64,000 nucleotides of DNA, taken from positions 1 to 64,000 of the IMG/VR virus record IMGVR_UViG_3300023184_004198. One strand, 5' to 3'. Made by a program: the position numbers and the translations under genes. Under the pieces are notes generated by a model that was given only the letters and a program-made list of their open reading frames with translations, was not told where the DNA came from and ran no database searches. This document shows positions 1,317 through 63,370 of the stretch, piece after piece (within the stretch, counting starts at the first letter, position 1; each line of letters opens with the position of its first letter).

Positions 1317-2465
1317 CTATACTTTGAACCAAGTTAGATATTGTTCTATTTTTTTGGTAACACTGGACCAATCTCCCATTGAAGGTTGACGGAATATCCT
1401 TGTGCTAGGATACCAAGGACTTGAGTCTCGGTCTAACATCCAACGCCAATCTGTGGCAAACCACTGTAACATCAACCAGGTAGGTCTTCCCAGTGCACCT
1501 GCTAGATGTGTAATAGCAGTGTCTACGCTAATCACAACATCCAAACAAGTTATCAATGCCGCAGTGTCAGCAAAACTAGCAATGGCTCCTGGGTACATTG
1601 TGACTCCAGCCGCTGCTAGTGCCTGCGATTCTTCATCAGTGGCATCCACCTGCAGGTTGATCCACTCGTATTGCGGATTGTTTTTGACTAACTCCAGCAT
1701 GGTTTCAAATGGCACGCTTTTGTGTTGATTAAGCCAGGCATCTCTACGTCCCGACCATGAAAATCCAACCCGCATGCGTGTTTTAGGACCCATGCGTTGT
1801 AACCAGGCTTTGACATCAGTTTCTTGTGCATTGATATAACTGATAGGACGCGGCAAATTATCTAAAGTAATTCCCAATACTCCAGGAATACTCATGATAG
1901 GAACCCAATAATCAAACTCGGGCGGTTCATCAGTGTATCTGCCAACCCAGTTAATAATACTAGCATTGGCTAACAAAGGAATCATGCCATCCGTGACTTG
2001 AAACAAAATCTTTGCTCCTGCGGCATGCAAGTTAAACAAAAATCTGCAGAACTGTATATTGTCTCCATGTCCCTGTTCACCTATGACCAATATGGTTTTG
2101 TCTTTTAAATCTTGTCCAGTCCAACGAGGTTGAGCATGTTGTGGCAGCGATCCCGCTAGATGTTCATACTGCCAACGTGCTTCGTAGGCCGGCCATCCAC
2201 GAGCATAATCGCCCATGATCAAATAACTCACAGCCAAGTTAAAACGTGCTGTGACATTGTTGGGATCAAGTATGGCAGCATGTTCTAAAAATGGTATGCC
2301 ACGTCTTGGTTGGCCCATTTCTCTCATGACGTTGCCATAGTTGTTGAATGCTGCCGCAGAATCAGGATCTTGACACATGGCCAAAGTATAACACTGCAAT
2401 GCCTGTGCAGGTTGATTGTTGGCACGATATTGGTTGCCTTCTTCAATGAGTTGTGATGAGTCCAT
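1317..2465 (-). CDS. TPR-repeat protein with C-terminal GT-B (GT9-like) glycosyltransferase domain
   Basis: N-terminal TPRs (AAAFNNYGNVMREMG, ARFNLAVSYL), then ILVIGEQGHGDNIQFCRF, VGFSWSG and LDVVISVDTAITHLAGALGRPTW. Confidence 0.85.
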   Translation of the reverse strand: MDSSQLIEEGNQYRANNQPAQALQCYTLAMCQDPDSAAAFNNYGNVMREMGQPRRGIPFLEHAAILDPNNVTARFNLAVSYLIMGDYARGWPAYEARWQYEHLAGSLPQHAQPRWTGQDLKDKTILVIGEQGHGDNIQFCRFLFNLHAAGAKILFQVTDGMIPLLANASIINWVGRYTDEPPEFDYWVPIMSIPGVLGITLDNLPRPISYINAQETDVKAWLQRMGPKTRMRVGFSWSGRRDAWLNQHKSVPFETMLELVKNNPQYEWINLQVDATDEESQALAAAGVTMYPGAIASFADTAALITCLDVVISVDTAITHLAGALGRPTWLMLQWFATDWRWMLDRDSSPWYPSTRIFRQPSMGDWSSVTKKIEQYLTWFKV

Positions 2466-2475: not shown

Positions 2476-2513
2476 CAGTATATACAGTGCGGTTTATTAT
2501 TTTAACTGATCCA

Positions 2514-2607: not shown

Positions 2608-3408
2608 ATGGGAAGAGCTCTAAAAATTCAAAAAACAAATCCTGCCGGTGGTAATGGAGGTGCTTCAGTAAATGTGGATCAAGGCTTTCCACCTTTTTCA
2701 GCATTGACCAATCCTGAATATAACACACCAGTTCAAACTCTGGATGCAGCACAGTTTTTGGGCGTGGTTGGTGGCAGTTCAACAGACAGCACAGCAAGCA
2801 CAACTTATCCAGAAATAGCCGCAGTGGTCAACATTGCTTTGGCTGACGGTACCAGTACCACTGCTGGTGCAGGACGCATTGTGCGCCAAAAAGGCTCACA
2901 CAAGTTCTTGGTAGAATACACTGCTAGTTCAACCTCAGCAGGCAGTTTTATTGTGGGACAAGCATACAAGATTCTTTCTGTGGGCACCACAACTGACTGG
3001 AATGCTGTGGGTCACGGCGAAGGTTCGGCAGCAGTAGGCGATGAATTTACCGCTACAGCAGCTGGTTCTGGCAATGGCACAGCATACCCAATAGGCGTTT
3101 GCATTTTGTCAAACACAGGTACACCTGCCGCTGGATACATGAGTATTGCTTACAGTGTAGGCGACAGCTCTGCTGTGTATGCCAGTTATATCAGCAACAA
3201 GTGGGTACGTGACTGGTCTGGAATGACCTATGCCACATACGCTGACACCAACTACGGTGTTAACATTCAAAGCGGTGAAAATCAGTATGTTACCAACTTC
3301 TTCACAGACGAAGGCAACGTTACTGTATCTGGTGGCGAAATGGTGGGAACAACCTACACAACCAACGCTACTATTCAATTGGCTCAAATCGCCAACGTTA
3401 CTTCTTAA
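2608..3408 (+). CDS. Virion structural protein, function unknown
   Basis: 266 aa, rich in Gly/Thr/Ala/Ser, good SD, follows a late box in the morphogenesis region. Confidence 0.6.
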   Translation: MGRALKIQKTNPAGGNGGASVNVDQGFPPFSALTNPEYNTPVQTLDAAQFLGVVGGSSTDSTASTTYPEIAAVVNIALADGTSTTAGAGRIVRQKGSHKFLVEYTASSTSAGSFIVGQAYKILSVGTTTDWNAVGHGEGSAAVGDEFTATAAGSGNGTAYPIGVCILSNTGTPAAGYMSIAYSVGDSSAVYASYISNKWVRDWSGMTYATYADTNYGVNIQSGENQYVTNFFTDEGNVTVSGGEMVGTTYTTNATIQLAQIANVTS

Positions 3409-3424
3409 TTTGTAAAGTGATCGG

Positions 3425-3457
3425 ATCCTCCCTGATACATACAGGGAGGATTTTTTT
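3425..3457 (+). terminator. Terminator-like hairpin that also sequesters the next SD
   Basis: ATCCTCCCTG-atacata-CAGGGAGGAT followed by a T run. GGAGG (3445-3449) is in the 3' arm, 8 nt before ATG 3458. Confidence 0.75.
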
Positions 3458-4045
3458 ATGAGTGCAGCATTTGTATTGGGCAACGGTGTCAGCCGACTGG
3501 CAGTGAATTTAAATCAACTAAAGCAACGTGGAAAAATCTACGGATGTAATGCCTTGTACAGAGAATTTGCACCAGATGTGTTGGTCAGCACAGATCGAGG
3601 TATTGCACAAACTATTCAAAATTCTGGATATGCACAAAACAACACAATGTATACCAGAAAACCCTTGCCGGGACTGGGTGCTCGTACAGTGCCACAAAGT
3701 TATTTTGGTTACAGTTCAGGACCTATTGCAGTGGGGTTGGCTGCATTGGACAAACATCTAGCAGTATACCTCATTGGATTTGACATGGGCCCAATCGGCA
3801 ACAACAAGTTCAACAATGTGTATGCAGACACAGAATTTTATAGAAAAAGCATAAGTTTGCCCACATTTACTGGCAACTGGATCAGACAAATTGCAACCAT
3901 TTGTCGAGACTTCTCGGACACCAGTTTTCATCGCGTCATGGGCGATACCACTGCCAGTATTCCTGAACTAAACAATATTCCTAATTTAAAAAACATGCCC
4001 ATGTCAGACTTGCTTGACCGTATAAATAACACAAAGGACCTTTAA
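3458..4045 (+). CDS. GT42/GT29/Maf-like (sialyltransferase-fold) glycosyltransferase-like protein
   Basis: Motifs FVLGNGVSR...IYGCNALY and YSSGPIAVGLA...VYLIGFDM parallel, from memory, the CstII-type GNGPS...RCNQFY and TSG...IYLSGIDF motifs. Confidence 0.55.
   Translation: MSAAFVLGNGVSRLAVNLNQLKQRGKIYGCNALYREFAPDVLVSTDRGIAQTIQNSGYAQNNTMYTRKPLPGLGARTVPQSYFGYSSGPIAVGLAALDKHLAVYLIGFDMGPIGNNKFNNVYADTEFYRKSISLPTFTGNWIRQIATICRDFSDTSFHRVMGDTTASIPELNNIPNLKNMPMSDLLDRINNTKDL
4021..4028 (+). promoter_or_regulatory. Late promoter TATAAATA
   Basis: Exact T4 late consensus, 17 nt before ATG 4046. Confidence 0.7.
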
Positions 4046-5554
4046 ATGTCAACAGTCAAACGAGTCAGTGGCGACTACACACTAGAAACCATAAATGCAG
4101 GTGATTTAGTCACTCTACAAAGTACCAATGTAAACATTGTGGGCAATCTCACAGTGACAGGCAATGCTGTGTTGACTGGAAATATCAATGCCGACAAAAT
4201 TTTTAACGGCACCAGTAGTGTAGAAATTCCCACAATCAATGGCAATATCACATTCAATCCTGGTGGCGTCAGCAATATCATGGTGGTATCCCCTTCTGGT
4301 ACTACCTTTAGTGGTGTGGTAGCATTTACAGGCAATGTAGACGCAGGTAATCTCAACACCACCGGCGGTGTTTATACTGCCAGTGGTACTGGTGCTGGCA
4401 ATGTTTCAATTGTCAACGGCAACATGTTGATTGCCTACAGTTCTAATACTACCAGCAATCAAAACATTAGATTTCAAGATTCGAACATAGCAGTAACTTC
4501 AGTAGGTGCAAACATTGGTGGCATAGAATGGTTTACATCTGACGCCACAGGCGCTGGCGCTAGAATCACAGCAAGAATTCGTGCAGTGTACGAAGACAGT
4601 GATGGCAACGCTAACATTCAAATTCAAACTGGCAGTACCTCAACTCCCACGACAAGAATCACTGTGATTGGTAGTTCAGGCAATGTAGGTATAGCCAATG
4701 TGGCACCGTTGCATGCGTTAGCGGTAACTGGCACAGTGTATGGCTCTAGCACACTTACCGCAGTGGGTAATATCACCGGCGGCAACATTGTCACAGCAGG
4801 ACTTGTGACTGTGACTGGTAATGTAAATGGTGGAAACTTACAAACTGCAGGATTGATCACAGCCACTGGCAACGTCACTGGTGGTAATGTAATCAGTTTG
4901 GGTGCGTTGAGTGCAGGTGCTGCTGGTATAACTGCAACTGGTAATATTCGCGGCGGTAACATTGTCAGTGATGACCAAATTTCAGCCACTGGTAACGTAA
5001 ACGCTGCCAACTTTAATGCTACACAAAACTTCAGTACCACAGGCAATGTACGCAGTGGCACAGTAACAGCATCTGGAAATATTGTTGGATCCAATATTCA
5101 AATAACCGGCAACAGTTACGGCACGGGTATTGGAGTAGAAAACATTGTATGGCAACCAACCACTGTGGCATTTAACAGTGCTGTACAGGCCAACGTTGGT
5201 ACATTAGGCTTCTTTATGCTGGGTGGTTACACTTACAAATTTGAAGCATACTTGCCTATATTACCTGCTGGTGCTACCACAACTGGTTTCAGTACATATT
5301 TTGATGCAGGAACTTGTTATTACACTGTTGAAGCACAAACCACACAAACTTCGGCATTTAGCACATCGACCTCCAACGTTTCGGGCACAGCCGCAGCCAC
5401 TCAAGGCATGACTGGTACCACACCTAGAACAGCAAGAATCACAGGCACTATTTACAGCGCCGGCAATGCCAATGTTGCTATACAAGCACAAACCAGTGCT
5501 GCAAATATCAACATACAAAGTGGCGCATTCCTGACCTACACTAGATTATCCTAA
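4046..5554 (+). CDS. Tail fibre-like protein with GN(I/V)TGGN repeats
   Basis: 502 aa with a central TAxGN(I/V)TGGN(I/V) repeat block and a globular C-terminus. Confidence 0.7.
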   Translation: MSTVKRVSGDYTLETINAGDLVTLQSTNVNIVGNLTVTGNAVLTGNINADKIFNGTSSVEIPTINGNITFNPGGVSNIMVVSPSGTTFSGVVAFTGNVDAGNLNTTGGVYTASGTGAGNVSIVNGNMLIAYSSNTTSNQNIRFQDSNIAVTSVGANIGGIEWFTSDATGAGARITARIRAVYEDSDGNANIQIQTGSTSTPTTRITVIGSSGNVGIANVAPLHALAVTGTVYGSSTLTAVGNITGGNIVTAGLVTVTGNVNGGNLQTAGLITATGNVTGGNVISLGALSAGAAGITATGNIRGGNIVSDDQISATGNVNAANFNATQNFSTTGNVRSGTVTASGNIVGSNIQITGNSYGTGIGVENIVWQPTTVAFNSAVQANVGTLGFFMLGGYTYKFEAYLPILPAGATTTGFSTYFDAGTCYYTVEAQTTQTSAFSTSTSNVSGTAAATQGMTGTTPRTARITGTIYSAGNANVAIQAQTSAANINIQSGAFLTYTRLS

Positions 5555-5604: not shown

Positions 5605-8600
5605 ATGGCACAACAGATTATTGACATTGGTGCTGCTGCGAATGACGGCACTGGTGAACCATTACGCGATGCATTTAACGCTGTAAATGAAAACTTTACT
5701 GAGATTTATACTGCTGGCCCAGTAGGCAGCAATGTCGTCATCTCCGGTAATACCATCACCGTCACTGGTGTCAACAACAACCTAGTGCTCAAAGCCAATG
5801 GCATTGGCAATATTCAAGCAAATAGTTCAATCATGCCCAGTATTGATGCTGTGTATGACATCGGGGCTCCTACTGCAAGAATTGACACTGTTTATGCTGC
5901 ATATTTTGTAGGCAACGGACAAGGCATTACTGGAATTACCACAGCAGGTACCAGCATAAATTCTGGTACATCCAATGTAAAAATTGTCAGTGCAAACGGC
6001 AATGTAACTGTCAGTGTAAATGGCACATCAAATGTGGCTGTGTTTGGCAGCACTGACTCAAATATCAAAGGAAATCTAGCAGTTGGGAATCTTTCAACTG
6101 CAGGACAAATAACTGCCGCCAGCAATATCACTGGTGGTAATATTAGAACTGTTGGCTCAGTCAGCGCAACAGGCAATATCACAGGCAACTATATTTTAGG
6201 TAATGGTGCATTGTTGTCGGGCATTATTACTTCTGTATCTAACATCAACAACGGCAACAGCAACGTAAACATTCAAAATGCAGGCGCCAATGTTACTGTC
6301 AGTGTAAATGGCATAGCAAACACTGTGGTATTTGGTTCTGCGGCTACTACATTCACTGGTAATATTGTTCCTGGTGCCAACAATGTATACACTTTGGGTA
6401 CTGCTACTCAAAGATTTAAAAACATTTATCTGAGTGGTAACACAATCACTCTTGGTGATTCAACATTTACCGCCAACGCTGATTCTGTTATTTTAACCAA
6501 CCCTGTTGGTGGAACTTTTACCATACAAGGAACCAGTCAACTCAGTGGATCGTCTATTGTAAATGGTCTCAGTCAAATGGCCATTCCTGTGGCCAATGGC
6601 AATGTACAGGTAAGTGTGGGAACCACTGCCAATGCATTGGTGATCAGTGCCACCAACATGCAAAGCATTGGTAACATATTGGCCAACAATCAAATCAGTG
6701 CTGCTGGTAACATTGTGACCAGCGGTTTCTTTGTGGGTAACTTTGTGGGCAATGTCACTGGCAACCTTGTTGTGCCTGGCGTTAACACACAGATTCTTTA
6801 CAACAACTTTGGCAATGCTGGAGCCAGTGCTGCCTTTAGATTTGACAGCACCTCCAATGTGTTAACACTCACAGGTAACGCACAAGTTGGTAACGTTCGT
6901 ACTGTGGGACAAGTCAGTGCCACTGGCAATGTAACTGGCAACTACTTTATTGGTAACGGTTCCTTGTTGACTGGCATTGCTGCCACTTACAGCAATGCCA
7001 ATGTGGCAACATATTTGGCCAGTGGAACCAACACATCAAATATCATTACCACTGCCAATATTGCTGGTGGAAACTTATCTTTAACTGGTGCATTCTCTCC
7101 CAGTTCGTTTAGTTCTGCAGGCAATGTAACTGGTGGCAACCTAAGAACAGCAGGAGTAGTAAGTTCAGCAGGCAACATCATAACTGACGGATACTTTGTT
7201 GGTACGTTTGCTGGCAACATCACAGGCAATTTGACAGTACCTGGATCAAATACACAAGTTATTTTTAACAACGCTGGCAATGCTGGCGCTAGTGCTGGAT
7301 TTAGATTTGACACAGCAGGGCCTAACTTGCTCACAGTCAATGGCAACGTACAGACCATTGGCCTGTTGGCATCTAGCAATGTGTCAGCAGCCGGCAATAT
7401 ATTGGCAAACAATGTTGTCATAACTGGCCTGGTCAGTGCGGTAGGAAGCATATCAACCACAGGCAATATCACTGGCGGAAATATCAACACTGCTGGTCAA
7501 GTCACAGCCACCGCCAATGTAACAGGTGGCAATTTGATCACTGCTGGCACATTGTCTGTGGGCAGTACTGTTAGCGCAACAGGCAATATCACTGGCAGTA
7601 ATATTATTACTACAGGGTCAGTAAGTGCTGGCGGCGATGTCAGTTTACTAGGCAATGTGGATGGCGGCAATATTCGCACTGTTGGGCAAGTCACTGCCAC
7701 AGGTAATATCACCGGCGGCAACATTCTGTTTGGCATATTCAAATTACTTAATAATGGTGATGCACAAGTTGGTAATTTAACTGTCAGCAATGGTCCAGGT
7801 ATTGGCAACCTTCTTGTTGGTAATATTATAAGTGCAACTGGCAACATACTGACCGGCGGTAACGTCAGCGCAACTGCCAACGTTGTTGGCGGTAACTTGC
7901 TGGCTGGATCAGGCGTTATCACCACAACTGGCAACATCACAGGCGGCAATATATTGGCTGGTTCAGGCGTTATTAGTACTGGTGGCAACGTCAATGGAGC
8001 AATATTCAACGGCAATGTGGCATTTGGTACCGGCACAGTGTCGGGCACTGGCAACATCACTGGTGGTAACGTATTAGTTTCAGGTGTGTTGCTATCTACC
8101 AACACAGTTTCAGCAGCCGGTAATGTAATTGGCGGCAACATCAACACAGGTGGAAATATTTCTACTTCAGGCAATGTGATTGCCCAAGACATCAGAGTTG
8201 GTCCAGGCATAACTGGCGGTACCATAAGTGCATTGGGCAATATCACCAGTGCCAACTCATTGAATGCGGTTAGTTTGAGTTTGAGTGGTAATGTTGTATC
8301 ACCACTCAATATCACAGGCAATGTAACTAGTGGCAATATTGTTGCTGTGGCAGCAGTCAATGCTGTTTCAATTAGTGCAAGTGGCAACATCACCGGTGGT
8401 AACATACTTGGCGGAGCCAACGTTAATGCCACAACTCACACAGGTACCACCGTTTCAGTAACTGCTAATATCACAGGCGGTAACTTGAATGCTGCGGGAT
8501 TGAGTCTGAGTGGCAATGTTGTGTCACCACTCAATGTCACAGGTACCGTAACTGGCGGAAATATCATTAGCGTGGCAGCAATGTCAGCAGCCACAATGAC

Positions 8601-10872
8601 CACCACAGGAAATGCCGTAGTCGGCGGGGACTTGATTGTCAATGGTAATTTGACATATCTCAACATATCATCGTTCAATGTTGAAGATCCCATAATTGGT
8701 CTTGGGCGTGGACCCAACAACGCACCACTGATCTCTGATGACAACAAAGATCGCGGTACTGATTTATTTTATTTTGACACAACAGAAAAACAAGCCTTTG
8801 TTGGATTCAAAGACTCAACTGGTAAAATGTTTGCTGCAACTGATGTCAGCATCGCCAACGAAGTGGTCACAGTCAACAGTTATGGAAGTTTTGTAGTTGG
8901 GCAGTTAGAAGGTGCCACAGTAAGCACCACAGGCAATATAACAGGCAGTTACTTCATTGGCAACGGATCTACGTTAACTGGTGTAGTGGCCACAGCAATT
9001 GGTGTGTTGCCAAGTTTGAGTGTGACTGGCAATATCATCACAGGCAACTTGAATTCGTTAGGACAAGTAAGTGCAGTGGCCAATGTTGTTGGCGGTAATA
9101 TCAGTACCGCAGGATTGATCACAGCCACAGGTAATATCACAGGTGGCAACATTGCCACAGGTGGACAGATCACCGCAACCGGCAATATCACAGGTGGTAA
9201 CATCATGGGTGGTGCCAACGTCAATGCCACAACCCACACAGGTACCACAGTTTCAGTAACTGGTAATATAACTGGTGGTAATATTTTAGGTGGTGCTAAC
9301 GTTAATGCCACAACCCACACAGGTACCACAGTTTCAGTAACTGCTAATATCACTGGTGGAAATTTAAATTCTGCTGGATTGAGTTTGAGTGGCAATGTTG
9401 TATCACCATTCAATGTCACTGGTAATATCACCGGCGGCAATGTTATAACTCCAGGACTAATTACTTCAACTGGAAATATCACCGGCGGCAATATTATTTC
9501 TATTGCGGTAGTCAGTACAGTATCTATTGTTGCTACAGCAAACGTCTCTGGAGGCAACATTACCACAGCAGGACAAGTAAGTGCCACTGGCAACATAACT
9601 GGTGGCAATGTCATTACAACAGGTTTGGCCACGGTAACAGGTAATGTCATTGGTGGCAATGTTACCACTGTAGGACAAGTAAGCGCGACGGCTAATATCA
9701 CCGGTGGCAATTTAATCACTGGTGGCTTGGCCACAGTAACTGGTAATATCACAGGTGGCAACATCGCCACAGCCGGTTTAGTAACAGCAACTGGTAATAT
9801 TGTGTCTGGTGCACTGATTTCGGCCGCAGGCAATGTGTCAGCCGCAGGCAATGTATTTGCTCAATACATTTTTGGTAACTTGGTTGGCAGCATTTCTCTG
9901 TCTAGTTCTTCTAACAGTCAAATATTGTTCAACAGTGCAGGAATTATTACAGGCGATACAGGACTGACATTTGATTATGCAGCCAACGCACTCACTGTAG
10001 GCGGCGCCATAACAACTACCAATGGTGGAAGTTTAACAGTTGGTGGTGGTGCTACAATTACTGGAAACATTTCTACCACAATTGGCAACATTGGTGGCGG
10101 CAATATTTTGGCCACAACATTGGTCAGTGCTGGTGGCAATGTCACTGGTGGAAACATTACCACAGCAGGTTTAATAACTGCTACTGGAAATGTCACTGGT
10201 GGCAATGTTAATTCTGGCGGTTTAGCAAGCATAACTGGAAATGTCATTGGTGGTAACATATCCACAGCAGGTTTAATAACTGCCACTGGAAATGTCATCG
10301 GTGGCAATATCATCACATCTGCATTGGTACAAGGACTCACTGTAAGTGCTACTGCAAACGTGGTTGGTGGTAATGTCAGCACAGCCGGATTGATTACGGC
10401 CACTGGTAACATCACCGGTGGTAATTTAAACACTGGCGCACAAGTTGTAGCAACTGGTAATATCACTGGCGGCAACATCAATGCAATAGGACTGATTTCA
10501 GCAGTTGGCAACATTGTTGGTGGTAACTTGTCGGGTACCAGCATTGTTGGTACGTTGACCACAGCCGCACAAAACAACATCACCAGTGTGGGCACACTAA
10601 GCAGTCTTAATGTTACGGCTAATATTGTTGGCGGCAACATTAACACAGCAGGACTAGTATCGGCCACAGGCAACATCGTTAGCGGAAACTTAAACGCAGT
10701 GGGATTGAGTCTAAGTGGCAATGTAATCAGCGCAATCAATTTGACCGCAAACATAACAACAACTGCCAATGTCAACGCCAATAATATCAACGCTACAAGC
10801 ACGATAAATATCAACAACGCTAGGGTAGCAACCATAGATGACGCGGCTGCACTGGCAATAGCATTAGGATAA
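5605..10872 (+). CDS. Long fibre protein with gp9/gp10-like baseplate-attachment N-terminus and extensive GNITGGN repeats
   Basis: N-terminal IDIGAAANDGTGEPLRDAFNAVNENF resembles the T4 gp9/gp10 N-terminal motif. More than 20 NITG units in 1755 aa. Confidence 0.8.
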   Translation: MAQQIIDIGAAANDGTGEPLRDAFNAVNENFTEIYTAGPVGSNVVISGNTITVTGVNNNLVLKANGIGNIQANSSIMPSIDAVYDIGAPTARIDTVYAAYFVGNGQGITGITTAGTSINSGTSNVKIVSANGNVTVSVNGTSNVAVFGSTDSNIKGNLAVGNLSTAGQITAASNITGGNIRTVGSVSATGNITGNYILGNGALLSGIITSVSNINNGNSNVNIQNAGANVTVSVNGIANTVVFGSAATTFTGNIVPGANNVYTLGTATQRFKNIYLSGNTITLGDSTFTANADSVILTNPVGGTFTIQGTSQLSGSSIVNGLSQMAIPVANGNVQVSVGTTANALVISATNMQSIGNILANNQISAAGNIVTSGFFVGNFVGNVTGNLVVPGVNTQILYNNFGNAGASAAFRFDSTSNVLTLTGNAQVGNVRTVGQVSATGNVTGNYFIGNGSLLTGIAATYSNANVATYLASGTNTSNIITTANIAGGNLSLTGAFSPSSFSSAGNVTGGNLRTAGVVSSAGNIITDGYFVGTFAGNITGNLTVPGSNTQVIFNNAGNAGASAGFRFDTAGPNLLTVNGNVQTIGLLASSNVSAAGNILANNVVITGLVSAVGSISTTGNITGGNINTAGQVTATANVTGGNLITAGTLSVGSTVSATGNITGSNIITTGSVSAGGDVSLLGNVDGGNIRTVGQVTATGNITGGNILFGIFKLLNNGDAQVGNLTVSNGPGIGNLLVGNIISATGNILTGGNVSATANVVGGNLLAGSGVITTTGNITGGNILAGSGVISTGGNVNGAIFNGNVAFGTGTVSGTGNITGGNVLVSGVLLSTNTVSAAGNVIGGNINTGGNISTSGNVIAQDIRVGPGITGGTISALGNITSANSLNAVSLSLSGNVVSPLNITGNVTSGNIVAVAAVNAVSISASGNITGGNILGGANVNATTHTGTTVSVTANITGGNLNAAGLSLSGNVVSPLNVTGTVTGGNIISVAAMSAATMTTTGNAVVGGDLIVNGNLTYLNISSFNVEDPIIGLGRGPNNAPLISDDNKDRGTDLFYFDTTEKQAFVGFKDSTGKMFAATDVSIANEVVTVNSYGSFVVGQLEGATVSTTGNITGSYFIGNGSTLTGVVATAIGVLPSLSVTGNIITGNLNSLGQVSAVANVVGGNISTAGLITATGNITGGNIATGGQITATGNITGGNIMGGANVNATTHTGTTVSVTGNITGGNILGGANVNATTHTGTTVSVTANITGGNLNSAGLSLSGNVVSPFNVTGNITGGNVITPGLITSTGNITGGNIISIAVVSTVSIVATANVSGGNITTAGQVSATGNITGGNVITTGLATVTGNVIGGNVTTVGQVSATANITGGNLITGGLATVTGNITGGNIATAGLVTATGNIVSGALISAAGNVSAAGNVFAQYIFGNLVGSISLSSSSNSQILFNSAGIITGDTGLTFDYAANALTVGGAITTTNGGSLTVGGGATITGNISTTIGNIGGGNILATTLVSAGGNVTGGNITTAGLITATGNVTGGNVNSGGLASITGNVIGGNISTAGLITATGNVIGGNIITSALVQGLTVSATANVVGGNVSTAGLITATGNITGGNLNTGAQVVATGNITGGNINAIGLISAVGNIVGGNLSGTSIVGTLTTAAQNNITSVGTLSSLNVTANIVGGNINTAGLVSATGNIVSGNLNAVGLSLSGNVISAINLTANITTTANVNANNINATSTININNARVATIDDAAALAIALG
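9223..9343 (+). repeat. Exact 40-bp direct repeat with 81-nt period inside the fibre gene
   Basis: AATGCCACAACCCACACAGGTACCACAGTTTCAGTAACTG at 9223-9262 and 9304-9343. Confidence 0.9.
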
Positions 10873-32769: not shown

Positions 32770-35700
32770 ATGAGTTTCTTTTACGATTTAAACAAAAAAC
32801 TAGACGCCATCCGCCAAACACCAAGCAAGACACATGGTCAATTGAATGAGCGTGATATGGGCAAACACAACAATGCCACCACAGGGTTCAAAGCATTGGC
32901 TGACAAAGCCGGCAAAGAATACGGCAGCAAGGCTGCTGGTGAGCGTGTGGCTGGTGCTGTCAAAGCCAAGATGGCCAAGGCCGGCAAACTAGAAGAAGAA
33001 GAAGGCATGAGCCGTGCTGCCAAAGGTTATGAAAAGTACGGCAAAAAAGGTATGGAAGCGTTGGCCAAAGCCGGACGTGAAGGCAAAGCACTAGACCCTG
33101 TTAGAAAAAAATACGACAAGTATGACAATAAAGAAGTGTCTGAAGACTTTGGTCCAGGTACTGCAGGTCGTAACAGAAATCAAGCAGGCCCAGAGTATTC
33201 CTTCAGCCCAGATACTAAAAACTATAAGACTCCAAATCTTGATAGAAATACTGAAATAGACCGAAAAGGATATGTGACAGATTGGAACAAAGAGATTGTC
33301 AACACAACAATGGGTCCGGATACTCGCGGTAACCAAGCACACATTGGTGCATATACGTCTGATGGTCAAGGTCAAACCAAATATGTAGACAGAACAACAC
33401 CTGGTGTTATCAACAAAATCAAAGACAAACTGGGTTGGGACATGCCTGATCCAGCATATGGTCCAAGACCAGACGAAACACAACGTTTAGCCAAACGTTA
33501 TCCCAAGCCAACACAAGAAAGTGGTGGGCCTGCTCCTGCAAAATCAATGGTTGACAAGCAAGCATCCACAGCAGGACGTACTCCGCCATATGTGCCTCCC
33601 AAGGCCAGCAAGCCAGCCCCCAAGGACAACGGCATGGGTCGTATTGTGCAAGGTACATGGCAAGCAGACCCCAAAGGAACAGTTAAAGCACCTAGTGGTG
33701 ATCCTGAAGGCGTACCAGAATCTAGTGCTCCAATGACACCCAAACAAAAGTCATTTGCCAAGCTGGCACCACCTGCAGACAAAATCACTTTTGCTGACAA
33801 GATTGCTGGCGCCAAAAAAGAAGTTGACGAAATGCTGGGCGATGTGGCTGCTGAGGCAATGAGAGCCGCGCTGGGCAAAGGCAAGCAAACTGTTCAAGGC
33901 ATGGCCGAAGATCAACCCACACATTTTGAAGTGCATTACAAAGACAATCAAAAAGGCCGTACAGCAAAAACCAAAGTCAAAGGGTCTGATGCCAAACAAG
34001 CAAAAGCAGCTTGGAATGACTGGAACAGCAGCAACACACCAGGCCGTTTTACTTTTGTGGCAGTAAAACCTGTGGCCGCTGAGATGGACGAAGGCAATGC
34101 ATTTGACTACAAGTCACCAAGAGATGCTGCACCCAAGGTTGGTAGTGTTGAACGTGGCCACAAGCACGACATTGAGCACACAGCCACAGGTCGTAAAGTC
34201 ACACGCCGTGTGGATGACCAAGGTCATTCAGTTGGTGCCGACGACGAAACAGATACACAACAAGGACCACGTGGACGTGGACGTCCAAAAGGCACTAAAG
34301 GTGCTATTGGTGCCAAAGGCCCGTCAGGTCGTTCTAAGTTGATGACCAAAGAAGGCGATCAAGACATCACTGACCAAGGTGAATACGATCAAGAAGGCGA
34401 CATGGCCAAAGACGACATCAAGACCATTGTGCGTCATGCACAGGCCTTGAGCCGAGTATTAGGCGACAACGACAACTTGCCAGAATGGGTACAATCAAAA
34501 CTGGCCAAGATTGAAGGCATGATGATCAGCATTGACGAGTACATGCAGAATCAAGCCAGCGATGATAGTGAAGAAGAACCCATTGCTGAAAAAGCAGTGA
34601 GCAAGAAACAACAACGTTTCATGGGCATGGTTCACGCAGCACAAAAAGGTGAAAAGCCTGCCAGCAAAGAAGTTGGCAAAGTGGCCAAAACCATGAAGAA
34701 AAAAGATGCTGAAGATTTTGCCAGCACCAAGCACAAAGGCTTGCCTGAAAAAGTCAAGAGCAAAAAGAAAGAAGAAGTTGATGAAAACTCTGAAGAAGGC
34801 AGATTGATTACTAAACAAACTGGTCCAGGACAGACTTCAACTAGTTCAACCACTGGCCGAGTCAGTGCCACAATGGACAAAGGCCAAGTCACTGTTAAAC
34901 CAGCCAAGTCTGGCGGCGTCAGTTACGGCAAAGGCATTTACGACTCAATGAATCGTGAATTAGAACTGATGATTGCTGAATCAATGAGCGTGAACATGAG
35001 CGACTCAACAGAAGGCAACAAGAGTCTGACTGTTACAGCCACAGATGACGATGCAATGAAACTGGCTATGATACTTAAATCAGCAGGCCTTGGTGGCGGC
35101 GACGCACACTCACACGGCGAAGAAGCATGTGATACCTGCGGCATGACAGATTGTGGTTGCGGTGATGTACAAGAAGCGGTGGATGAAAATGCTCCTGATT
35201 GGCCCACCAACACTGAACAGGCTGACAGCAACTTTGGTTATGCTGGTGGATTGAACAAGCCCAAAGCAGACATTGCTGGCGATGGACAATCAACTGTGCC
35301 TGTTGTGGCTACCCGTCCACACAATGATGATCTACGCAGAATCAGAGAAATGGCTGGGATCAAAAATGAAGAACACATTGATCTAGGACCAACATCTCCT
35401 GAAGTTGCTGCCATGTCAAAAGACGAAGTTGATGCTGCATTGAGATTAGGAATGAGCCCAGATATTTCTGGCATGGATCCCGACGAAGTAAATGCACAAT
35501 TTGGCGATAGCAACGATACCCAGTACGAAGACAGCATTCAACGCATGCGTGAAATGGCCGGTATCAAAGAATGGGAAGTTAAACTAGACTCACCACCAAG
35601 AACTGGTGCTTATCCACACGAACTGTATGGCAAAGATAGAGAGAGATATGATGCTGTACAAACAGGATCTGGCCCAGAAAGTCAGAAAGTGCAACAATAC

Positions 35701-36222
35701 TATCAGAATAAAAACGCAGGCAGTTATGATTCTGGACAAAAATACACCGACGAACGTGATGCAGATTACGCAGATAGATTAAATGCTGCACGTGCAGGAA
35801 GAATAGCCAACAATGAATTAACACCTGGTGAATGGATACAAAAAGGAACAAATGCTGTAAGAAAAGCATTTGGCGGACAAGATAAACCACTACAGCCGGC
35901 TAAGACAGTGGTAGACCTTGATGGCCCATCAAACTATCCAAGCGCGAGATATGTTGGCAGTGATGACGCAAATATAAAACGTTACTTAGATCCAAAGGCT
36001 GATGCAGCGTATAAAGCAAGACAAAAGGCATTGTTCCCAGACGATTTTAAAGAAGGAAAGGGCGACGGCAACTTAGCCAACAACGCTAAACCATATGACA
36101 AAGTCACACAGGGTGATGTTATTGCTGGACGTCTTGGCAAAGACGAAAAAGGCGGCAAAGAAAAACAAGTTGAAGAAAGCATTTTTGCTCTCACCAACCA
36201 ATGGAAAGCATACAAGGGGTAA
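32770..36222 (+). CDS. Modular capsid-internal protein (1150 aa) containing a DUF3008-like module
   Basis: Charged, low-structure modules separated by hydrophobic-x-Glu sites. Includes KAVSKKQQRFMGMVHAAQKG...KHKGLPEK (DUF3008-like) and two REMAGIK motifs. Confidence 0.55.
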   Translation: MSFFYDLNKKLDAIRQTPSKTHGQLNERDMGKHNNATTGFKALADKAGKEYGSKAAGERVAGAVKAKMAKAGKLEEEEGMSRAAKGYEKYGKKGMEALAKAGREGKALDPVRKKYDKYDNKEVSEDFGPGTAGRNRNQAGPEYSFSPDTKNYKTPNLDRNTEIDRKGYVTDWNKEIVNTTMGPDTRGNQAHIGAYTSDGQGQTKYVDRTTPGVINKIKDKLGWDMPDPAYGPRPDETQRLAKRYPKPTQESGGPAPAKSMVDKQASTAGRTPPYVPPKASKPAPKDNGMGRIVQGTWQADPKGTVKAPSGDPEGVPESSAPMTPKQKSFAKLAPPADKITFADKIAGAKKEVDEMLGDVAAEAMRAALGKGKQTVQGMAEDQPTHFEVHYKDNQKGRTAKTKVKGSDAKQAKAAWNDWNSSNTPGRFTFVAVKPVAAEMDEGNAFDYKSPRDAAPKVGSVERGHKHDIEHTATGRKVTRRVDDQGHSVGADDETDTQQGPRGRGRPKGTKGAIGAKGPSGRSKLMTKEGDQDITDQGEYDQEGDMAKDDIKTIVRHAQALSRVLGDNDNLPEWVQSKLAKIEGMMISIDEYMQNQASDDSEEEPIAEKAVSKKQQRFMGMVHAAQKGEKPASKEVGKVAKTMKKKDAEDFASTKHKGLPEKVKSKKKEEVDENSEEGRLITKQTGPGQTSTSSTTGRVSATMDKGQVTVKPAKSGGVSYGKGIYDSMNRELELMIAESMSVNMSDSTEGNKSLTVTATDDDAMKLAMILKSAGLGGGDAHSHGEEACDTCGMTDCGCGDVQEAVDENAPDWPTNTEQADSNFGYAGGLNKPKADIAGDGQSTVPVVATRPHNDDLRRIREMAGIKNEEHIDLGPTSPEVAAMSKDEVDAALRLGMSPDISGMDPDEVNAQFGDSNDTQYEDSIQRMREMAGIKEWEVKLDSPPRTGAYPHELYGKDRERYDAVQTGSGPESQKVQQYYQNKNAGSYDSGQKYTDERDADYADRLNAARAGRIANNELTPGEWIQKGTNAVRKAFGGQDKPLQPAKTVVDLDGPSNYPSARYVGSDDANIKRYLDPKADAAYKARQKALFPDDFKEGKGDGNLANNAKPYDKVTQGDVIAGRLGKDEKGGKEKQVEESIFALTNQWKAYKG

Positions 36223-59131: not shown

Positions 59132-59812
59132 TTATCTATGATTTACTTCCACAAATTCATACTTACCAGTAAATGATTCCGGAATGTCTTGCCAAGTGCC
59201 AGACAATTGGTCACTTATCCACTGCTCGTAGTAAGGACGGTCTTTGAACCACCAGAACAAATCACTGCCGGACCAGTCTGAGTAAAAACTACGAAAGAAC
59301 GCTCTATCTCGAGGCACACAAAAATATGCAGGATCGTATATGGTCTTTTTGCCTTTGGCCACACGTTGAAAGTTTAGCCCAATAAAACAAAACTTTTCAG
59401 CATGCCCTTGCAAAGTTTCACGCACCCAGGTCATGTCATCGTCGGGTATGCTGTTTAGCACCTGTGTGCATATCACCCCGTCAAATTTTGCATCTGGCGG
59501 TGGTGGTGTTTCAAATTCTGGCACACAAGGATCATAACAATAGACACTGACACCTAGATATTGATCAAACGTCTGCCATTGATCGGGAGCCAGTTCCATT
59601 CCTTGATTGCCTCCATATGGCAATCGTTCTTTGTATTGCAGTCCTTTGCCGCATCCGTAGTCTAAAATATTTTTTGCTCCATAACGATCTACCAGATCCT
59701 TGATACACTTTTGGTATTTTACAACATCATAACCAGCCCAACTTTTGTTGCTGGCTTGAAACTCACGACCCAGTCGCACTGATTCTTCATAATATTGGCT
59801 AGGGCTTGTAAT
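59132..59812 (-). CDS. Class I SAM-dependent methyltransferase; probable ATT start
   Basis: ILDYGCGKG, YDPCVPEF and FDGVICTQVL. The frame extends 11 codons upstream of GTG 59779 to an ATT behind SD GGAG. Confidence 0.75.
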   Translation of the reverse strand: MTSPSQYYEESVRLGREFQASNKSWAGYDVVKYQKCIKDLVDRYGAKNILDYGCGKGLQYKERLPYGGNQGMELAPDQWQTFDQYLGVSVYCYDPCVPEFETPPPPDAKFDGVICTQVLNSIPDDDMTWVRETLQGHAEKFCFIGLNFQRVAKGKKTIYDPAYFCVPRDRAFFRSFYSDWSGSDLFWWFKDRPYYEQWISDQLSGTWQDIPESFTGKYEFVEVNHR

Positions 59813-59813
59813 T

Positions 59814-60500
59814 TTATTTCTCCAAATTTATTGTGGTAGATAATTTTTTGATATTATCATCTTTCGTATACAGCGGATGCAATCTTGCAATAGTAGGACG
59901 GCAATGGCTCACGGACATAATATTTGTGCCTAGCAACCAGTCAGTTGGAAGAAAACCATTGGCTTTGACCCAATCAATCAATCTTGCCGCGGCATGTGGT
60001 TTGATGATGTAAGCGTAGGCCCCAAACGTGTTCCAGCCAGCGGCAGTTTCATGATTGCCACCACCGTGTTCACCATTTTGAATGGTCCAGATTGATGATG
60101 CATCAGTTGAGTGTGTGTCCAACCAGTGTTCATACGAATCGCTGTAAGGATTTCCAGAATCTAATTTAATGACATCATCAAACAAGTCTAAAATGTTGTC
60201 TGGCAGTGGCTTGATAAAATATCCATCATGTTCTAGCACAAGATATGGGATATTGTGTTTGACACAATCCAGCCACAAGTAATAATGACTTAAAAAACAA
60301 CCAATTATTCCCACTCGCCCTTTTTTGAATTTTCCCAAGGGTCGTAGACCCAACAAATCCAAATGACCGTCTGCATCAAACCCGTTTATAGCATCAAATA
60401 CTTCAACAGATATCCCAAACTTTGCGGCCTGTTCTATGCAATCCTGTGCTACTGTTTGAGACAGCTGATGATTTTGTAACACTATTATTTTTGTTCGCAT
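59814..60500 (-). CDS. Glycosyltransferase family 25-like
   Basis: VEVFDAING...IGCFLSHYYLW...YLVLEHDG...GAYAYIIKP...PTDW. Confidence 0.85.
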   Translation of the reverse strand: MRTKIIVLQNHQLSQTVAQDCIEQAAKFGISVEVFDAINGFDADGHLDLLGLRPLGKFKKGRVGIIGCFLSHYYLWLDCVKHNIPYLVLEHDGYFIKPLPDNILDLFDDVIKLDSGNPYSDSYEHWLDTHSTDASSIWTIQNGEHGGGNHETAAGWNTFGAYAYIIKPHAAARLIDWVKANGFLPTDWLLGTNIMSVSHCRPTIARLHPLYTKDDNIKKLSTTINLEK

Positions 60501-61141
60501 GTGTATATCCAATCAGATTCGTTCAGTGTATCAACATGTGTGTAACCCAAGGATGCCAGTAAGTCTTTGGTTTTTTGATTGATGTTGTCTCCAAATCTAT
60601 TCAGATATTTACTTGGAGGTGGATCCCACATTTCAATGGCTATAACTGGTTTGAATTTTTTGATAGTAGACACAGCGCCGCTGAGAGCAAAATATTCATA
60701 GCCTTCTATATCCAAGTGTATCAAATCACATGCTGTCAATCCCAAATTATCTATCAAATAGATTGGATAAATCCCATCACCGTTGATAAAACTTTTTCCT
60801 CTACTTTTGGATTTGATATGAAGATCGACCAATCCAGGATCACTACCAAGACATCCTTGAGATTTAACTATATTTCCTTCAGGGCAATTCATTGCTAAAC
60901 AATAGAAATTTAGCCAGTCTGGTTCAAAAGTATAAACAGCATTAAAAATTTTTGAATATTGTTTTGGATACATACCGCAGTTGCCGCCAGCTTGCACCAC
61001 AACTTTTTTGTCATCAACGTAACTGGATATTCGGCCAGGCAAATCAAAATTTTCTAATAAAAATTTCCAAGTATTGGTATCATCTTTTGGCCAATACCAT
61101 CCTTCTTTAATTTCTACTAGATCAAGTGCAGTTATGGCCAC
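60485..61141 (-). CDS. FkbM-family methyltransferase
   Basis: VVQAGGNCG...VYTFEPD...LIHLDIEGYE...KPVIAIE. Confidence 0.85.
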   Translation of the reverse strand: MAITALDLVEIKEGWYWPKDDTNTWKFLLENFDLPGRISSYVDDKKVVVQAGGNCGMYPKQYSKIFNAVYTFEPDWLNFYCLAMNCPEGNIVKSQGCLGSDPGLVDLHIKSKSRGKSFINGDGIYPIYLIDNLGLTACDLIHLDIEGYEYFALSGAVSTIKKFKPVIAIEMWDPPPSKYLNRFGDNINQKTKDLLASLGYTHVDTLNESDWIYTCEQK

Positions 61142-63357: not shown

Positions 63358-63362
63358 AAGCG

Positions 63363-63368
63363 TATTTA
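63363..63368 (-). promoter_or_regulatory. Late promoter box TAAATA, 5 nt before ATG
   Basis: Minus strand TAAATA-cgctt-ATG (ATG at 63357). Confidence 0.7.
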
Positions 63369-63370
63369 CA

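What the first reader, a model, noticed from the sequence alone, without database searches (positions are those of the whole stretch)
3458..4045. Sialyltransferase/Maf-like gene heading the fibre operon
Seen: LGNGVSR, YGCNALY, SSG and YLIGFD motifs in a 195-aa ORF directly upstream of the repeat fibres. Established (from memory): CstII (GT42) and flagellin Maf proteins share GNGPS/CN/SG/GxD motifs and transfer CMP-nonulosonic acids. Inference: it may cap virion glycans, or modify fibres directly, with Kdo or sialic-type sugars drawn from host pools.
Basis: partly seen in the sequence, partly recalled or inferred. Interest (0 to 1): 0.65.

Follow-up and report, generated by a model that had tools for sequence, protein, structure and literature searches.

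The report
Minimal Maf/sialyltransferase-like enzyme in phage
A small gene between the capsid gene and the fibre genes of a freshwater jumbo phage encodes a stripped-down relative of the bacterial enzymes that attach sialic-acid-type sugars to flagella and surface sugars; thousands of aquatic phages carry it, and none of these copies has a known function.

Summary
The ORF (3458..4045, +, 195 aa) is real.

- **Sequence:** a profile of the family finds only GT42 sialyltransferases (CstI/CstII) among solved structures, E 1e-7 to 9e-6.
- **Structure:** a confident AlphaFold model (pLDDT 95.8) matches the catalytic domain of the flagellin glycosyltransferase Maf best (Z 13.1), then CstII (10.3). 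The related pyrophosphokinases match less (Z 8-9.7) and over fewer residues.
- **Differences from known enzymes:** it lacks the GT42 catalytic histidine and Maf's flanking domains. It is a new minimal variant, not a member of either family.
- **Context:** capsid gene, TPR-glycosyltransferase, orf266, this gene, then fibres, conserved in about 80 related loci. In other lineages the homologue sits in the head module, not beside fibres.
- **Expression:** a conserved, covarying terminator hairpin that buries its ribosome-binding site lies directly upstream. A late-promoter-like box lies inside its 3' end. So it does not head the fibre operon.
- **Donor:** no CMP-sugar pathway is encoded, so any donor would come from the host.

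Virion glycosylation with a Kdo or sialic-type sugar is plausible but untested.

The parts
3458..4045 (+). 195-aa minimal Maf/GT42-like (DUF115 superfamily) putative glycosyltransferase, called GT42L here
   Evidence: ORF. Family conservation. Profile hits to CstI/CstII only. AF2 model pLDDT 95.8. Maf Z 13.1, CstII Z 10.3.
3423..3457 (+). Terminator-like hairpin (12-bp stem, 7-nt loop) plus a run of 7 T, ending 1 nt before the ATG. Its 3' arm contains the GGAGG Shine-Dalgarno (3445-3449) of the gene.
   Evidence: Scan, sequence. Present at the same place in related loci of 47-90% protein identity. 5 of 7 consensus pairs show compensatory double changes in 45 sequences.
4021..4038 (+). T4-late-promoter-like box (TATAAATA 4021-4028) and AAGGA Shine-Dalgarno (4034-4038) for the fibre gene, embedded in the last codons of GT42L
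   Evidence: The ATAAATA core and AAGGA are kept at nucleotide level in most of 77 related loci. 4 of the 8 ATAAATA boxes in the window lie 18-89 nt upstream of structural-gene starts.
2608..3408 (+). orf266: conserved Ser/Thr/Gly-rich protein of unknown fold, always paired upstream of GT42L. A candidate abundant virion protein and candidate acceptor.
   Evidence: Synteny in about 70 of 80 loci. Alignment A2. AF2 pLDDT 73.8 with no PDB match above Z 4.2. S+T 22%. It has its own ATAAATA box at 2513 and the terminator after it.
1317..2465 (-). TPR + GT9-like (GT-B) glycosyltransferase, with the architecture of protein O-glycosyltransferases (OGT, FlmG)
   Evidence: Pfam TPR families and Glyco_transf_9 at 3.2e-7. 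TPRs most like OGT/SPINDLY TPRs. Heptosyltransferase I model at 1.3e-5. Present in most but not all related loci. FlmG architecture from PMC7591256.
57..1253 (+). gp23-type major capsid protein
   Evidence: PF07068 at 3.2e-96, phrog_138.
4046..5554 (+). First repeat fibre / beta-solenoid protein (502 aa). Its start abuts the GT42L stop.
   Evidence: Weak FapA beta-solenoid hit. S+T 24%, G 14%, N 11%.
5605..10872 (+). Second repeat fibre protein (1755 aa)
   Evidence: No Pfam family. Conserved downstream of GT42L in related loci.
59132..63384 (-). Distal cluster of glycan-building genes: SAM methyltransferase, GT25, two FkbM methyltransferases, a weak DUF6716-like GT, and GT2. It shows that the phage builds glycans of its own.
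   Evidence: Pfam hits, GT2 also. The genes beyond it are replication genes.

Best explanation
GT42L is a soluble, single-domain enzyme of the Maf/GT42 (DUF115) superfamily. It is reduced to the nucleotide-sugar-binding catalytic core. The most likely reaction is transfer of a CMP-activated 2-keto-3-deoxy sugar acid (Kdo or a nonulosonic acid) from the host pool onto a hydroxyl of a phage structural protein, or onto a glycan already attached to one. The neighbouring TPR-GT9 enzyme and the distal GT25/GT2/FkbM cluster could build such a glycan.

Candidate acceptors are orf266, the capsid protein and the Ser/Thr-rich fibres. The enzyme would be made late and in small amounts, by read-through of the terminator that closes the orf266 transcript, with its ribosome-binding site partly masked by that hairpin.

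Shown: homology and fold, conserved motif residues, synteny, the hairpin with covariation, and the absence of a phage-encoded CMP-sugar pathway.

Inferred: the donor class, the catalytic roles of D46, S87 and D109, the acceptor, and the expression logic.
For: 1. Sequence: a family profile hits only GT42 sialyltransferases in the PDB, with the GNGxS / CN..Y / SSG / GxD blocks aligned. 18 of 58 members weakly hit PF01973 and 13 of 58 hit PF06002. There is a weak hit to the sialyltransferase PHROG.
2. Structure: pLDDT 95.8. Maf 5mu5 gives Z 13.1 over 165 of 195 residues and CstII with its donor analogue gives Z 10.3 over 172 residues. MptE and the TPKs align only 118-130 residues, with MptE reaching only to residue 161. 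Foldseek's top hits are CstII/CstI.
3. Residues shown essential in Maf enzymes are Glu/Asp, Ser and Asp, with Ser to Asp spaced 23 residues apart in CbMaf. The family has a conserved D46, an SSG serine at position 87 (glycine G88 invariant) and an invariant D109, with S87 to D109 spaced 22 residues apart.
4. Maf enzymes can use CMP-Neu5Ac and CMP-Kdo (abstract).
5. Late or structural context recurs. It is capsid gene - orf266 - GT42L - fibres in 80 loci. It is portal - p80 - GT42L - acidic scaffold-like protein - protease - scaffold - capsid gene in a second lineage. It lies within about 2 kb of the capsid gene in HTVC008M, L106 and L115.
6. Other glycosylation genes are present: TPR-GT9 next door, the GT25/GT2/FkbM cluster, and sugar epimerase/dehydratases in relatives.
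7. No PF02348, PF03102 or PF00793 is found in G000, and no PF02348 or PF03102 in a 99%-complete relative, so a host donor would be needed.
8. Phage virion glycosylation has a precedent in mycobacteriophages (Freeman et al. 2023, cited in PMC12619734).
Against: - No biochemical data exist for any family member.
- The GT42 catalytic His (H188/H202) has no conserved counterpart.
- The mapping of D46, S87 and D109 onto the Maf residues rests on spacing and motif order, not on a residue-level superposition.
- The same fold is used by ATP-dependent pyrophosphokinases (Z 8-9.7).
- The 195-aa protein has no acceptor-binding domain.
- The complex prediction with orf266 gave no answer.
- In pelagiphage Mosig and several other contigs no capsid gene is nearby, so the link to virion genes is frequent but not universal.
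- TPR-GT9 is missing from the more distant loci that keep GT42L.
- Metatranscriptome contigs barely touch the gene, which is not informative either way.
Confidence: 0.45

Rival explanations
1. Same enzyme class (a CMP-sugar or other nucleotide-sugar transferase), but the acceptor is not the virion. It would modify a host envelope glycan (lipo-oligosaccharide, capsule or O-antigen, as CstII does) or a host or phage non-structural protein, for example to block superinfection or remodel the receptor.
For: Its closest sequence relatives in the PDB act on lipo-oligosaccharide. Several homologues are not next to virion genes (Mosig; L109, L111-L113, L118). The minimal protein has no protein-binding domain.
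Against: The gene sits repeatedly inside head or late structural modules in several lineages. It is a soluble protein with no membrane segment in the model. Lytic jumbo and T4-like phages gain little from seroconversion.
Confidence: 0.2
2. It is not a glycosyltransferase but a MptE/thiamine-pyrophosphokinase-type enzyme. It would transfer pyrophosphate (or another group) from ATP to a small molecule such as a pterin or vitamin precursor.
For: Archaeal HPPK (MptE) scores Z 9.3-9.7 and the TPKs Z 8-8.8. Some members weakly hit the Pfam model named MptE-like. The GxGxS and GxD blocks are common to the whole superfamily. Conserved D40, D46 and D109 could bind Mg.
Against: The profile search of the PDB finds GT42 chains but neither MptE nor a TPK. 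The kinases align over only 118-130 residues and miss the C-terminal third, whereas Maf and CstII cover 165-173. The C30-N31 block matches CstII. The position in head and fibre modules gives no metabolic logic. PF01973 is also the Maf domain.
Confidence: 0.12
3. It glycosylates phage DNA, adding a sugar to a hypermodified base as protection against restriction.
For: In the pelagiphages the homologue lies among recombination and replication genes (UvsY/UvsW; gp59/gp32). Phage GTs that decorate DNA are well known (cited).
Against: No ThyA-type pyrimidine hydroxymethylase is found in G000 or in three relatives, one of them 99% complete. The UvsY-UvsW spot in T4-like phages is simply downstream of the head module. 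No known DNA glycosyltransferase has this fold or uses a CMP-sugar (my knowledge).
Confidence: 0.05
4. It is a non-catalytic head-assembly or prohead-core protein that merely keeps an enzyme-like fold.
For: In one lineage it occupies a slot between the portal gene and an acidic scaffold-like gene, upstream of the protease gene, where T4 (from memory) has prohead core genes.
Against: The invariant residues are exactly the nucleotide-binding and active-site blocks of the superfamily. There is no N-terminal targeting peptide, since the fold starts at residue 3. Expression behind a terminator with a masked ribosome-binding site suits an enzyme, not a stoichiometric structural protein.
Confidence: 0.05

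Closest known systems
Maf (motility-associated factor) flagellin nonulosonic-acid O-glycosyltransferases, e.g. Magnetospirillum magneticum Maf (PDB 5MU5), Clostridium botulinum CbMaf, Geobacillus GkMaf
   Same: It is the best structural match: Z 13.1, rmsd 3.2 over 165 of 195 residues against the central catalytic domain 272-513. It has the same order of a GxGxS loop, an acidic residue after strand 3, a conserved Ser and a GxD Asp. The Ser-to-Asp spacing is 22 against 23. Maf enzymes O-glycosylate Ser/Thr of a filament protein in the cytoplasm with CMP-activated ulosonic acids, including Kdo.
   Different: At 195 aa against about 600, it lacks the N- and C-terminal domains that flank the Maf catalytic domain. 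It does not reach the PF01973 threshold. It is encoded by phages with no flagellin or nonulosonic-acid synthesis genes nearby. The residue equivalence is inferred, not superposed.
GT42 sialyltransferases CstII / CstI (Campylobacter jejuni) and the Pasteurella multocida enzyme (PDB 1RO7, 2P2V, 9C08)
   Same: They are the only significant sequence-profile hits in the PDB (E 1e-7 to 9e-6), with the N-terminal GNGxS and C-N..Y blocks and the SSG / GxD blocks aligned. Structural match is Z 9.3-10.3 over up to 173 residues. A long loop after GxD lies where CstII has its lid.
   Different: There is no conserved histidine equivalent to the catalytic base H188/H202. It is about 60-90 residues shorter. 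It does not reach the PF06002 threshold. GT42 enzymes act on lipo-oligosaccharide galactose or sialic acid, whereas the context here is virion genes.
MptE-type 6-hydroxymethyl-dihydropterin pyrophosphokinase (PDB 8SD5) and thiamine pyrophosphokinases
   Same: It shares the Rossmann-like core and the glycine-rich first loop. Z is 8-9.7.
   Different: Only 118-130 residues align, and for MptE the C-terminal part beyond residue 161 is not shared. They are not found by the sequence profile. There is no metabolic context.
Mycobacteriophage virion glycosylation (Freeman et al. 2023, PMC10527164, as cited in PMC12619734)
   Same: Phage-encoded glycosyltransferases sit beside the structural genes and decorate capsid and tail proteins.
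   Different: Those enzymes are of other GT families and use other sugars (my knowledge). Nothing comparable has been reported for aquatic myoviruses or with a Maf/GT42-type enzyme: literature searches found no paper on phage DUF115/MptE-like proteins.
FlmG (Caulobacter) and OGT-type TPR glycosyltransferases. This applies to the neighbouring gene 1317..2465, not to the finding itself.
   Same: N-terminal TPR domain plus a C-terminal GT-B domain. FlmG uses its TPRs to bind flagellin and transfers pseudaminic acid.
   Different: Homology to FlmG itself was not tested. The GT domain here is GT9-like and the protein is shorter (382 against 596 aa).

Membership tests
GT42 (CAZy) / Pfam PF06002 CST-I | Sequence reaches the family model's curated threshold | tested here: not met
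   P0001 has no Pfam hit at E <= 1. 13 of 58 relatives hit PF06002 only weakly, best E 8.6e-5.
GT42 (CAZy) / Pfam PF06002 CST-I | Variant GT-A / Rossmann-like fold of CstII | tested here: met
   Foldseek top hits are CstII/CstI, E 2.7e-4, prob 1.0, TM 0.49-0.56. VIA Z 9.3-10.3 with 157-173 residues aligned.
GT42 (CAZy) / Pfam PF06002 CST-I | Donor-site sequence blocks: GNGPS loop, C-N after strand 2, (T/S)SG, GxD | tested here: met
   HMMER aligns these blocks between the family profile and CstII/9C08. The positions are invariant or 96-100% conserved.
GT42 (CAZy) / Pfam PF06002 CST-I | Catalytic base histidine (H188 in CstII, H202 in CstI) | tested here: not met
   No position has His in more than 28% of 120 family sequences. 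The site aligned with H188 is T138 here and is variable.
GT42 (CAZy) / Pfam PF06002 CST-I | Two lid tyrosines that contact the donor phosphate (Y156, Y162; role and numbering from memory) | tested here: inconclusive
   Y122 and Y128 are conserved in 94-98% of sequences and are also 6 residues apart in the loop after GxD. HMMER does not align them to Y156/Y162.
GT42 (CAZy) / Pfam PF06002 CST-I | Transfers sialic acid from CMP-Neu5Ac | not testable with these tools
   This needs an enzyme assay.
Maf flagellin glycosyltransferases (Pfam PF01973, MAF_flag10/DUF115) | Central catalytic domain fold | tested here: met
   5mu5 residues 272-513, Z 13.1, rmsd 3.2, 165 aligned, about 3 Z units above the next family.
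Maf flagellin glycosyltransferases (Pfam PF01973, MAF_flag10/DUF115) | Sequence reaches the PF01973 threshold | tested here: not met
   There is no hit for P0001 or in the whole record. 18 of 58 relatives hit weakly, best E 3.6e-4.
Maf flagellin glycosyltransferases (Pfam PF01973, MAF_flag10/DUF115) | Essential acidic, Ser and acidic residues (E324/D415 in MmMaf; D272, S334, D357 in CbMaf) | tested here: inconclusive
   D46 (96%), S87 and D109 (99%) occur in the same order and with matching Ser-to-Asp spacing. No residue-level superposition was available.
Maf flagellin glycosyltransferases (Pfam PF01973, MAF_flag10/DUF115) | Flanking N- and C-terminal domains that give a protein of about 600 aa | tested here: not met
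   The protein is 195 aa and the fold fills residues 3-190. Longer relatives exist elsewhere: P0136 at 435 aa and the L090 protein at 571 aa.
Maf flagellin glycosyltransferases (Pfam PF01973, MAF_flag10/DUF115) | Encoded with flagellin and nonulosonic-acid biosynthesis genes | tested here: not met
   It sits in a phage structural locus. No NeuB or CMP-sugar synthetase was found in G000 or in 5 relatives.
MptE / thiamine pyrophosphokinase | Full-length structural and sequence similarity to the kinases | tested here: not met
   Z is 8-9.7 over only 118-130 residues (MptE reaches only to residue 161). They are absent from the profile hits at E <= 10.
MptE / thiamine pyrophosphokinase | ATP-dependent pyrophosphoryl transfer | not testable with these tools
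   This needs an enzyme assay.
GT29 eukaryotic sialyltransferases | Fold and sialylmotifs L, S, III and VS | tested here: not met
   There is only a distant fold match, Z 7.0-7.5, and no sequence hit.

The most novel reading that the evidence does not exclude
Many aquatic myoviruses, from freshwater jumbo phages to SAR11 pelagiphages, use a minimal Maf-like transferase to coat capsid-associated proteins or fibres with acidic Kdo or sialic-like sugars taken from the host's CMP-sugar pool. This would be a widespread and so far unseen 'sialylation' of phage particles. It would change virion charge, stickiness, recognition by grazers and receptor mimicry.
Probability: 0.22. Interest if true: 0.8.

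Novelty: new variant of a known kind. Interest (0 to 1): 0.55.

Why it matters
The family is very large: thousands of sequences and 952 clusters at 50% identity. It is almost exclusively viral and has no Pfam model and no function. It occurs in cultured pelagiphages (HTVC008M, Mosig) that infect the most abundant marine bacterium.

If it is an ulosonic-acid transferase acting on virions, it would extend phage virion glycosylation from mycobacteriophages to the dominant aquatic myoviruses. It would also define the smallest known catalytic unit of the Maf/GT42 superfamily, one that works without the GT42 histidine. Such a unit could be useful for glyco-engineering. The hypothesis is directly testable because host-phage pairs carrying homologues are in culture.

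Tried and rejected
- **Direct family assignment.** Pfam and NCBIfam scans of the protein alone gave nothing. Single-sequence PDB search gave only a chance malate dehydrogenase hit.
- **Residue-level link to Maf through sequence.** P0136 against the PDB and the L090 571-aa protein against the PDB did not reach 5mu5. A homologue search with the N-terminal domain of P0136 returned only more unannotated phage proteins. The Maf residue mapping therefore remains an inference from spacing.
- **Complex prediction of GT42L with orf266.** No answer, score 0.00. This is not evidence either way.
- **Fold of orf266.** The model is moderate (pLDDT 73.8) and only SH3/Tudor-like scraps match at Z <= 4.2. The atlas features search gave nothing named. 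hhalign found no relation between orf266 and the acidic protein that follows the homologue in the T4-like lineage.
- **Donor pathway genes.** PF02348, PF03102, PF00793 and PF01973 were absent from the record, and PF02348 and PF03102 from relatives.
- **ThyA-type hydroxymethylase (DNA-modification rival).** Absent.
- **Expression.** Only contigs of metatranscriptomes were available. They cover the capsid gene heavily and this gene hardly at all, but contigs cannot rank expression.
- **Literature.** No paper on phage DUF115/MptE-like proteins was found. The 'moraphage' paper describes a different lineage. No open paper on the MptE structure was found.
- **Cellular genomes.** All 21 hits are in metagenome-assembled genomes of unrelated phyla. 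Those checked carry phage head genes, so they look like mis-binned phage contigs, not bacterial homologues.
Full report
**Setting.** The window is the first 64 kb of a 212.6-kb IMG/VR virus record that CheckV rates 61% complete. A relative of 345 kb is 99% complete, so this is a jumbo myovirus. It has a gp23-type major capsid protein (PF07068, 3.2e-96), a T4-like tail sheath and a gp15 homologue. DNA runs that hold 76-93% of the sampled words of the first 6 kb come from lake and freshwater metagenomes.

**Observation.** The ORF at 3458..4045 (+) is 195 aa with an ATG start.

- The gene has 3766 near homologues in metagenomes and 952 representative clusters at 50% identity.
- In a 58-sequence alignment at 30-56% identity to the query, G8, N9, G10, R13, C30, N31, G88, G107, D109 and Y128 are invariant.
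- In 120 sequences the same positions, plus S12, Y34, D46, N119, N120, Y122, T125 and W141, are 88-100% conserved.

**What it is related to.** Alone, the protein hits no Pfam or NCBIfam model. It belongs to phrog_30607 (unknown function) and hits a sialyltransferase PHROG weakly.

- A profile of the family searched against all PDB sequences finds only GT42 sialyltransferases (P. multocida 9C08, CstII, CstI) at E 1.1e-7 to 9e-6. The next hits are at E > 0.1. The aligned blocks are the N-terminal GNGxS loop with the C-N..Y block, and the SSG / GxD region.
- Among the 58 relatives, 18 weakly hit PF01973 (the Maf/MptE domain) and 13 hit PF06002 (CST-I).
- AlphaFold2 gives a very confident model, pLDDT 95.8 and pTM 0.92.
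- Foldseek's top PDB hits are CstII and CstI.
- An exhaustive structural alignment ranks the catalytic domain of Magnetospirillum Maf first (Z 13.1, rmsd 3.2, 165 residues). CstII with its donor analogue follows (Z 10.3, 172 residues), then CstI (9.7), archaeal HPPK/MptE (9.3-9.7, only 130 residues, ending at residue 161), SteA, thiamine pyrophosphokinases (8-8.8) and GT29 sialyltransferases (about 7).

The kinases of the same superfamily are a real but weaker alternative.

**Where it differs.** GT42 enzymes use a histidine base, H188 in CstII and H202 in CstI. No family position holds His in more than 28% of sequences, and the residue aligned to H188 is a variable Thr/Tyr.

In Maf enzymes the essential residues are E324 and D415 (M. 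magneticum), or D272, S334 and D357 (C. botulinum). The family has a conserved D46, an SSG serine at position 87 and an invariant D109. The Ser-to-Asp spacing is 22, against 23 in CbMaf and 22 in CstII (CstII numbering from memory). I infer that these residues are equivalent, but I could not make a residue-level superposition.

The protein is only the catalytic core. It lacks Maf's flanking domains.

- Longer relatives exist. One is a 435-aa fusion of a canonical PF01973 domain with this domain (P0136).
- Another is a 571-aa protein whose C-terminal domain has the GNGPS and CN motifs (hhalign prob 84.5%). Its gene overlaps the start of a family member.
- The family is essentially viral. All 21 'genome' hits are metagenome-assembled genomes of unrelated phyla, and several carry phage head genes.
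- The only cultured carriers found are the pelagiphages HTVC008M and Mosig.

**Context.** In 80 related IMG/VR loci (47-90% identity) the order is capsid gene, TPR-GT9 on the opposite strand (in most loci), orf266, GT42L, then fibres. The orf266-GT42L pair is nearly universal.

- In a second lineage, whose capsid protein is 74-77% identical, the homologue (34-39% identical) lies between the portal gene with a small ORF and an acidic scaffold-like gene. This is upstream of the prohead protease, scaffold and capsid genes.
- In HTVC008M, L106 and L115 it lies within about 2 kb of the capsid gene.
- In Mosig and several other contigs no capsid gene is nearby.

The recurrent link is therefore to the head and late structural module rather than to fibres specifically.

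The neighbour at 1317..2465 (-) combines OGT-like TPRs with a GT9-like GT-B domain. This is the architecture of protein O-glycosyltransferases such as FlmG. At 59.1-63.4 kb the phage carries a cluster with GT25, GT2, two FkbM methyltransferases and a SAM methyltransferase. Relatives carry up to three sugar epimerase/dehydratases. The phage clearly builds glycans.

It encodes no CMP-sugar synthetase, NeuB or KdsA, and a 99%-complete relative also lacks the synthetase and NeuB. It has no ThyA-type hydroxymethylase that would point to DNA glycosylation.

**Expression anatomy.** Between the orf266 stop (3406-3408) and the GT42L ATG lies a 12-bp hairpin (3423-3453) followed by seven T's that end 1 nt before the ATG. 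Its 3' arm contains the GGAGG ribosome-binding site.

- The hairpin is present at the same place across the lineage. It shows compensatory double changes in 5 of 7 consensus pairs.
- The last codons of GT42L carry a TATAAATA box 18 nt before the fibre ATG, plus an AAGGA ribosome-binding site. Their core is kept at nucleotide level in most of 77 loci.
- Four of the eight ATAAATA boxes in the window lie 18-89 nt upstream of structural-gene starts: orf266, the first fibre, orf110 and the sheath.

I read this as follows. orf266 is a strongly expressed, terminated late unit. The fibre genes have their own late promoter. GT42L is made in small amounts by read-through, as suits an enzyme. It does not 'head' the fibre operon.

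Metatranscriptome data were available only as contigs. They cover the capsid gene and little else, and they cannot test this reading.

**Mechanism proposed.** The protein is a cytoplasmic, late, low-abundance transferase. It would bind a CMP-activated ulosonic acid from the host pool and transfer it to Ser/Thr hydroxyls of a virion protein, or to a glycan primed by the TPR-GT9 enzyme. CMP-Kdo is present in any Gram-negative host. Maf enzymes accept CMP-Kdo and CMP-Neu5Ac. D46 or D109 would replace the GT42 histidine as base.

Candidate acceptors are orf266 (22% Ser+Thr), the capsid protein and the fibres (23-24% Ser+Thr). A complex prediction with orf266 gave no answer, and the fold of orf266 is unassigned.

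- **Shown:** family, fold, conserved residues, synteny, hairpin, absence of donor genes.
- **Inferred:** donor, acceptor, catalytic residues, expression level.

**Rivals.** The alternatives are the same chemistry on a host envelope glycan or a non-virion protein (0.2), a pyrophosphokinase-type reaction (0.12), DNA glycosylation (0.05) and a non-catalytic head-assembly role (0.05).

**Novelty.** I found no paper on phage DUF115/MptE-like proteins. Virion glycosylation is documented for mycobacteriophages with other enzymes. I rate this a new variant of a known kind. It is a minimal, His-less, phage-specific branch of the Maf/GT42 superfamily. It fails two defining features of GT42 (model threshold, catalytic His) and three of Maf (model threshold, flanking domains, flagellar context), yet most likely works like them. 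Interest is 0.55.

Noticed in passing
window 3423-3457 (+): A conserved intrinsic-terminator-like hairpin plus T-run lies between orf266 and GT42L. Its 3' arm doubles as the GT42L Shine-Dalgarno. Compensatory changes are seen across 45 related loci.
   Followed up: yes
window 2513-2519, 4021-4028, 10804-10810, 25554-25560 (+); also 21957-21964 (-) and 47298-47305 (+): (T)ATAAATA boxes like T4 late promoters sit just upstream of orf266, the first fibre gene, orf110 and the sheath gene. Four of the 8 ATAAATA boxes fall in upstream windows that make up about 8% of the sequence. The exact 8-mer alone is not enriched (14 of 100 shuffles reach 3).
   Followed up: partly
window 1317-2465 (-): A TPR + GT9-like glycosyltransferase lies between the capsid gene and orf266 on the opposite strand. 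It has the architecture of OGT and FlmG. It is present in most related loci but is lost in the more distant ones.
   Followed up: partly
window 2608-3408 (+): orf266 belongs to a conserved family that starts with MGRPLKIQK-like residues and has variable insertions. It is Ser/Thr/Gly-rich and matches no known fold (best Z 4.2). It is probably an abundant virion protein.
   Followed up: partly
window 59132-63384 (-): A cluster of six glycan-related genes: SAM methyltransferase, GT25, two FkbM-type methyltransferases, a weak DUF6716-like GT and GT2. Replication genes follow it beyond 64 kb (UvsW, primase, DnaB).
   Followed up: partly
window 50559-53491 (+): Two radical-SAM genes, one with a SPASM domain, flank a RecA/UvsX-like gene. 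A third radical-SAM/SPASM gene lies at G000 68.2-69.5 kb (L104 5216-6544).
   Followed up: no
L084 8001-8594, L088 7001-7603, L107/L108 8001-8552: In a related T4-like lineage the homologue sits between the portal gene plus an 80-aa ORF and a very acidic scaffold-like protein, ahead of the prohead protease. The gene moved within the head module while staying linked to it.
   Followed up: yes
L090 2394-4741; protein P0136: Pairs of DUF115-type domains occur. In L090 a 571-aa protein with a C-terminal GNGPS/CN domain overlaps the start of a family member, and an HD-domain phosphohydrolase follows. P0136 is a 435-aa fusion of a PF01973 domain with this family.
   Followed up: partly
L105 (Haliscomenobacter MAG contig, 148 kb) and L106-L125: All hits in the species-genome collection are contigs of metagenome-assembled genomes from many phyla. 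L105 carries the full portal-to-fibre layout of this phage lineage, so it is a mis-binned phage contig and at best a weak host hint (Bacteroidota).
   Followed up: partly
window 32001-36000: There is a strong AT skew (0.30) over the 1150-aa ORF at 32770..36222. It was not examined.
   Followed up: no
L002 (HTVC008M gp096) and L003 (Mosig_00142): The cultured SAR11 myophages carry a 276-281-aa version of the family with an insertion after residue 67. It is annotated as hypothetical. These phages offer an experimental system.
   Followed up: partly
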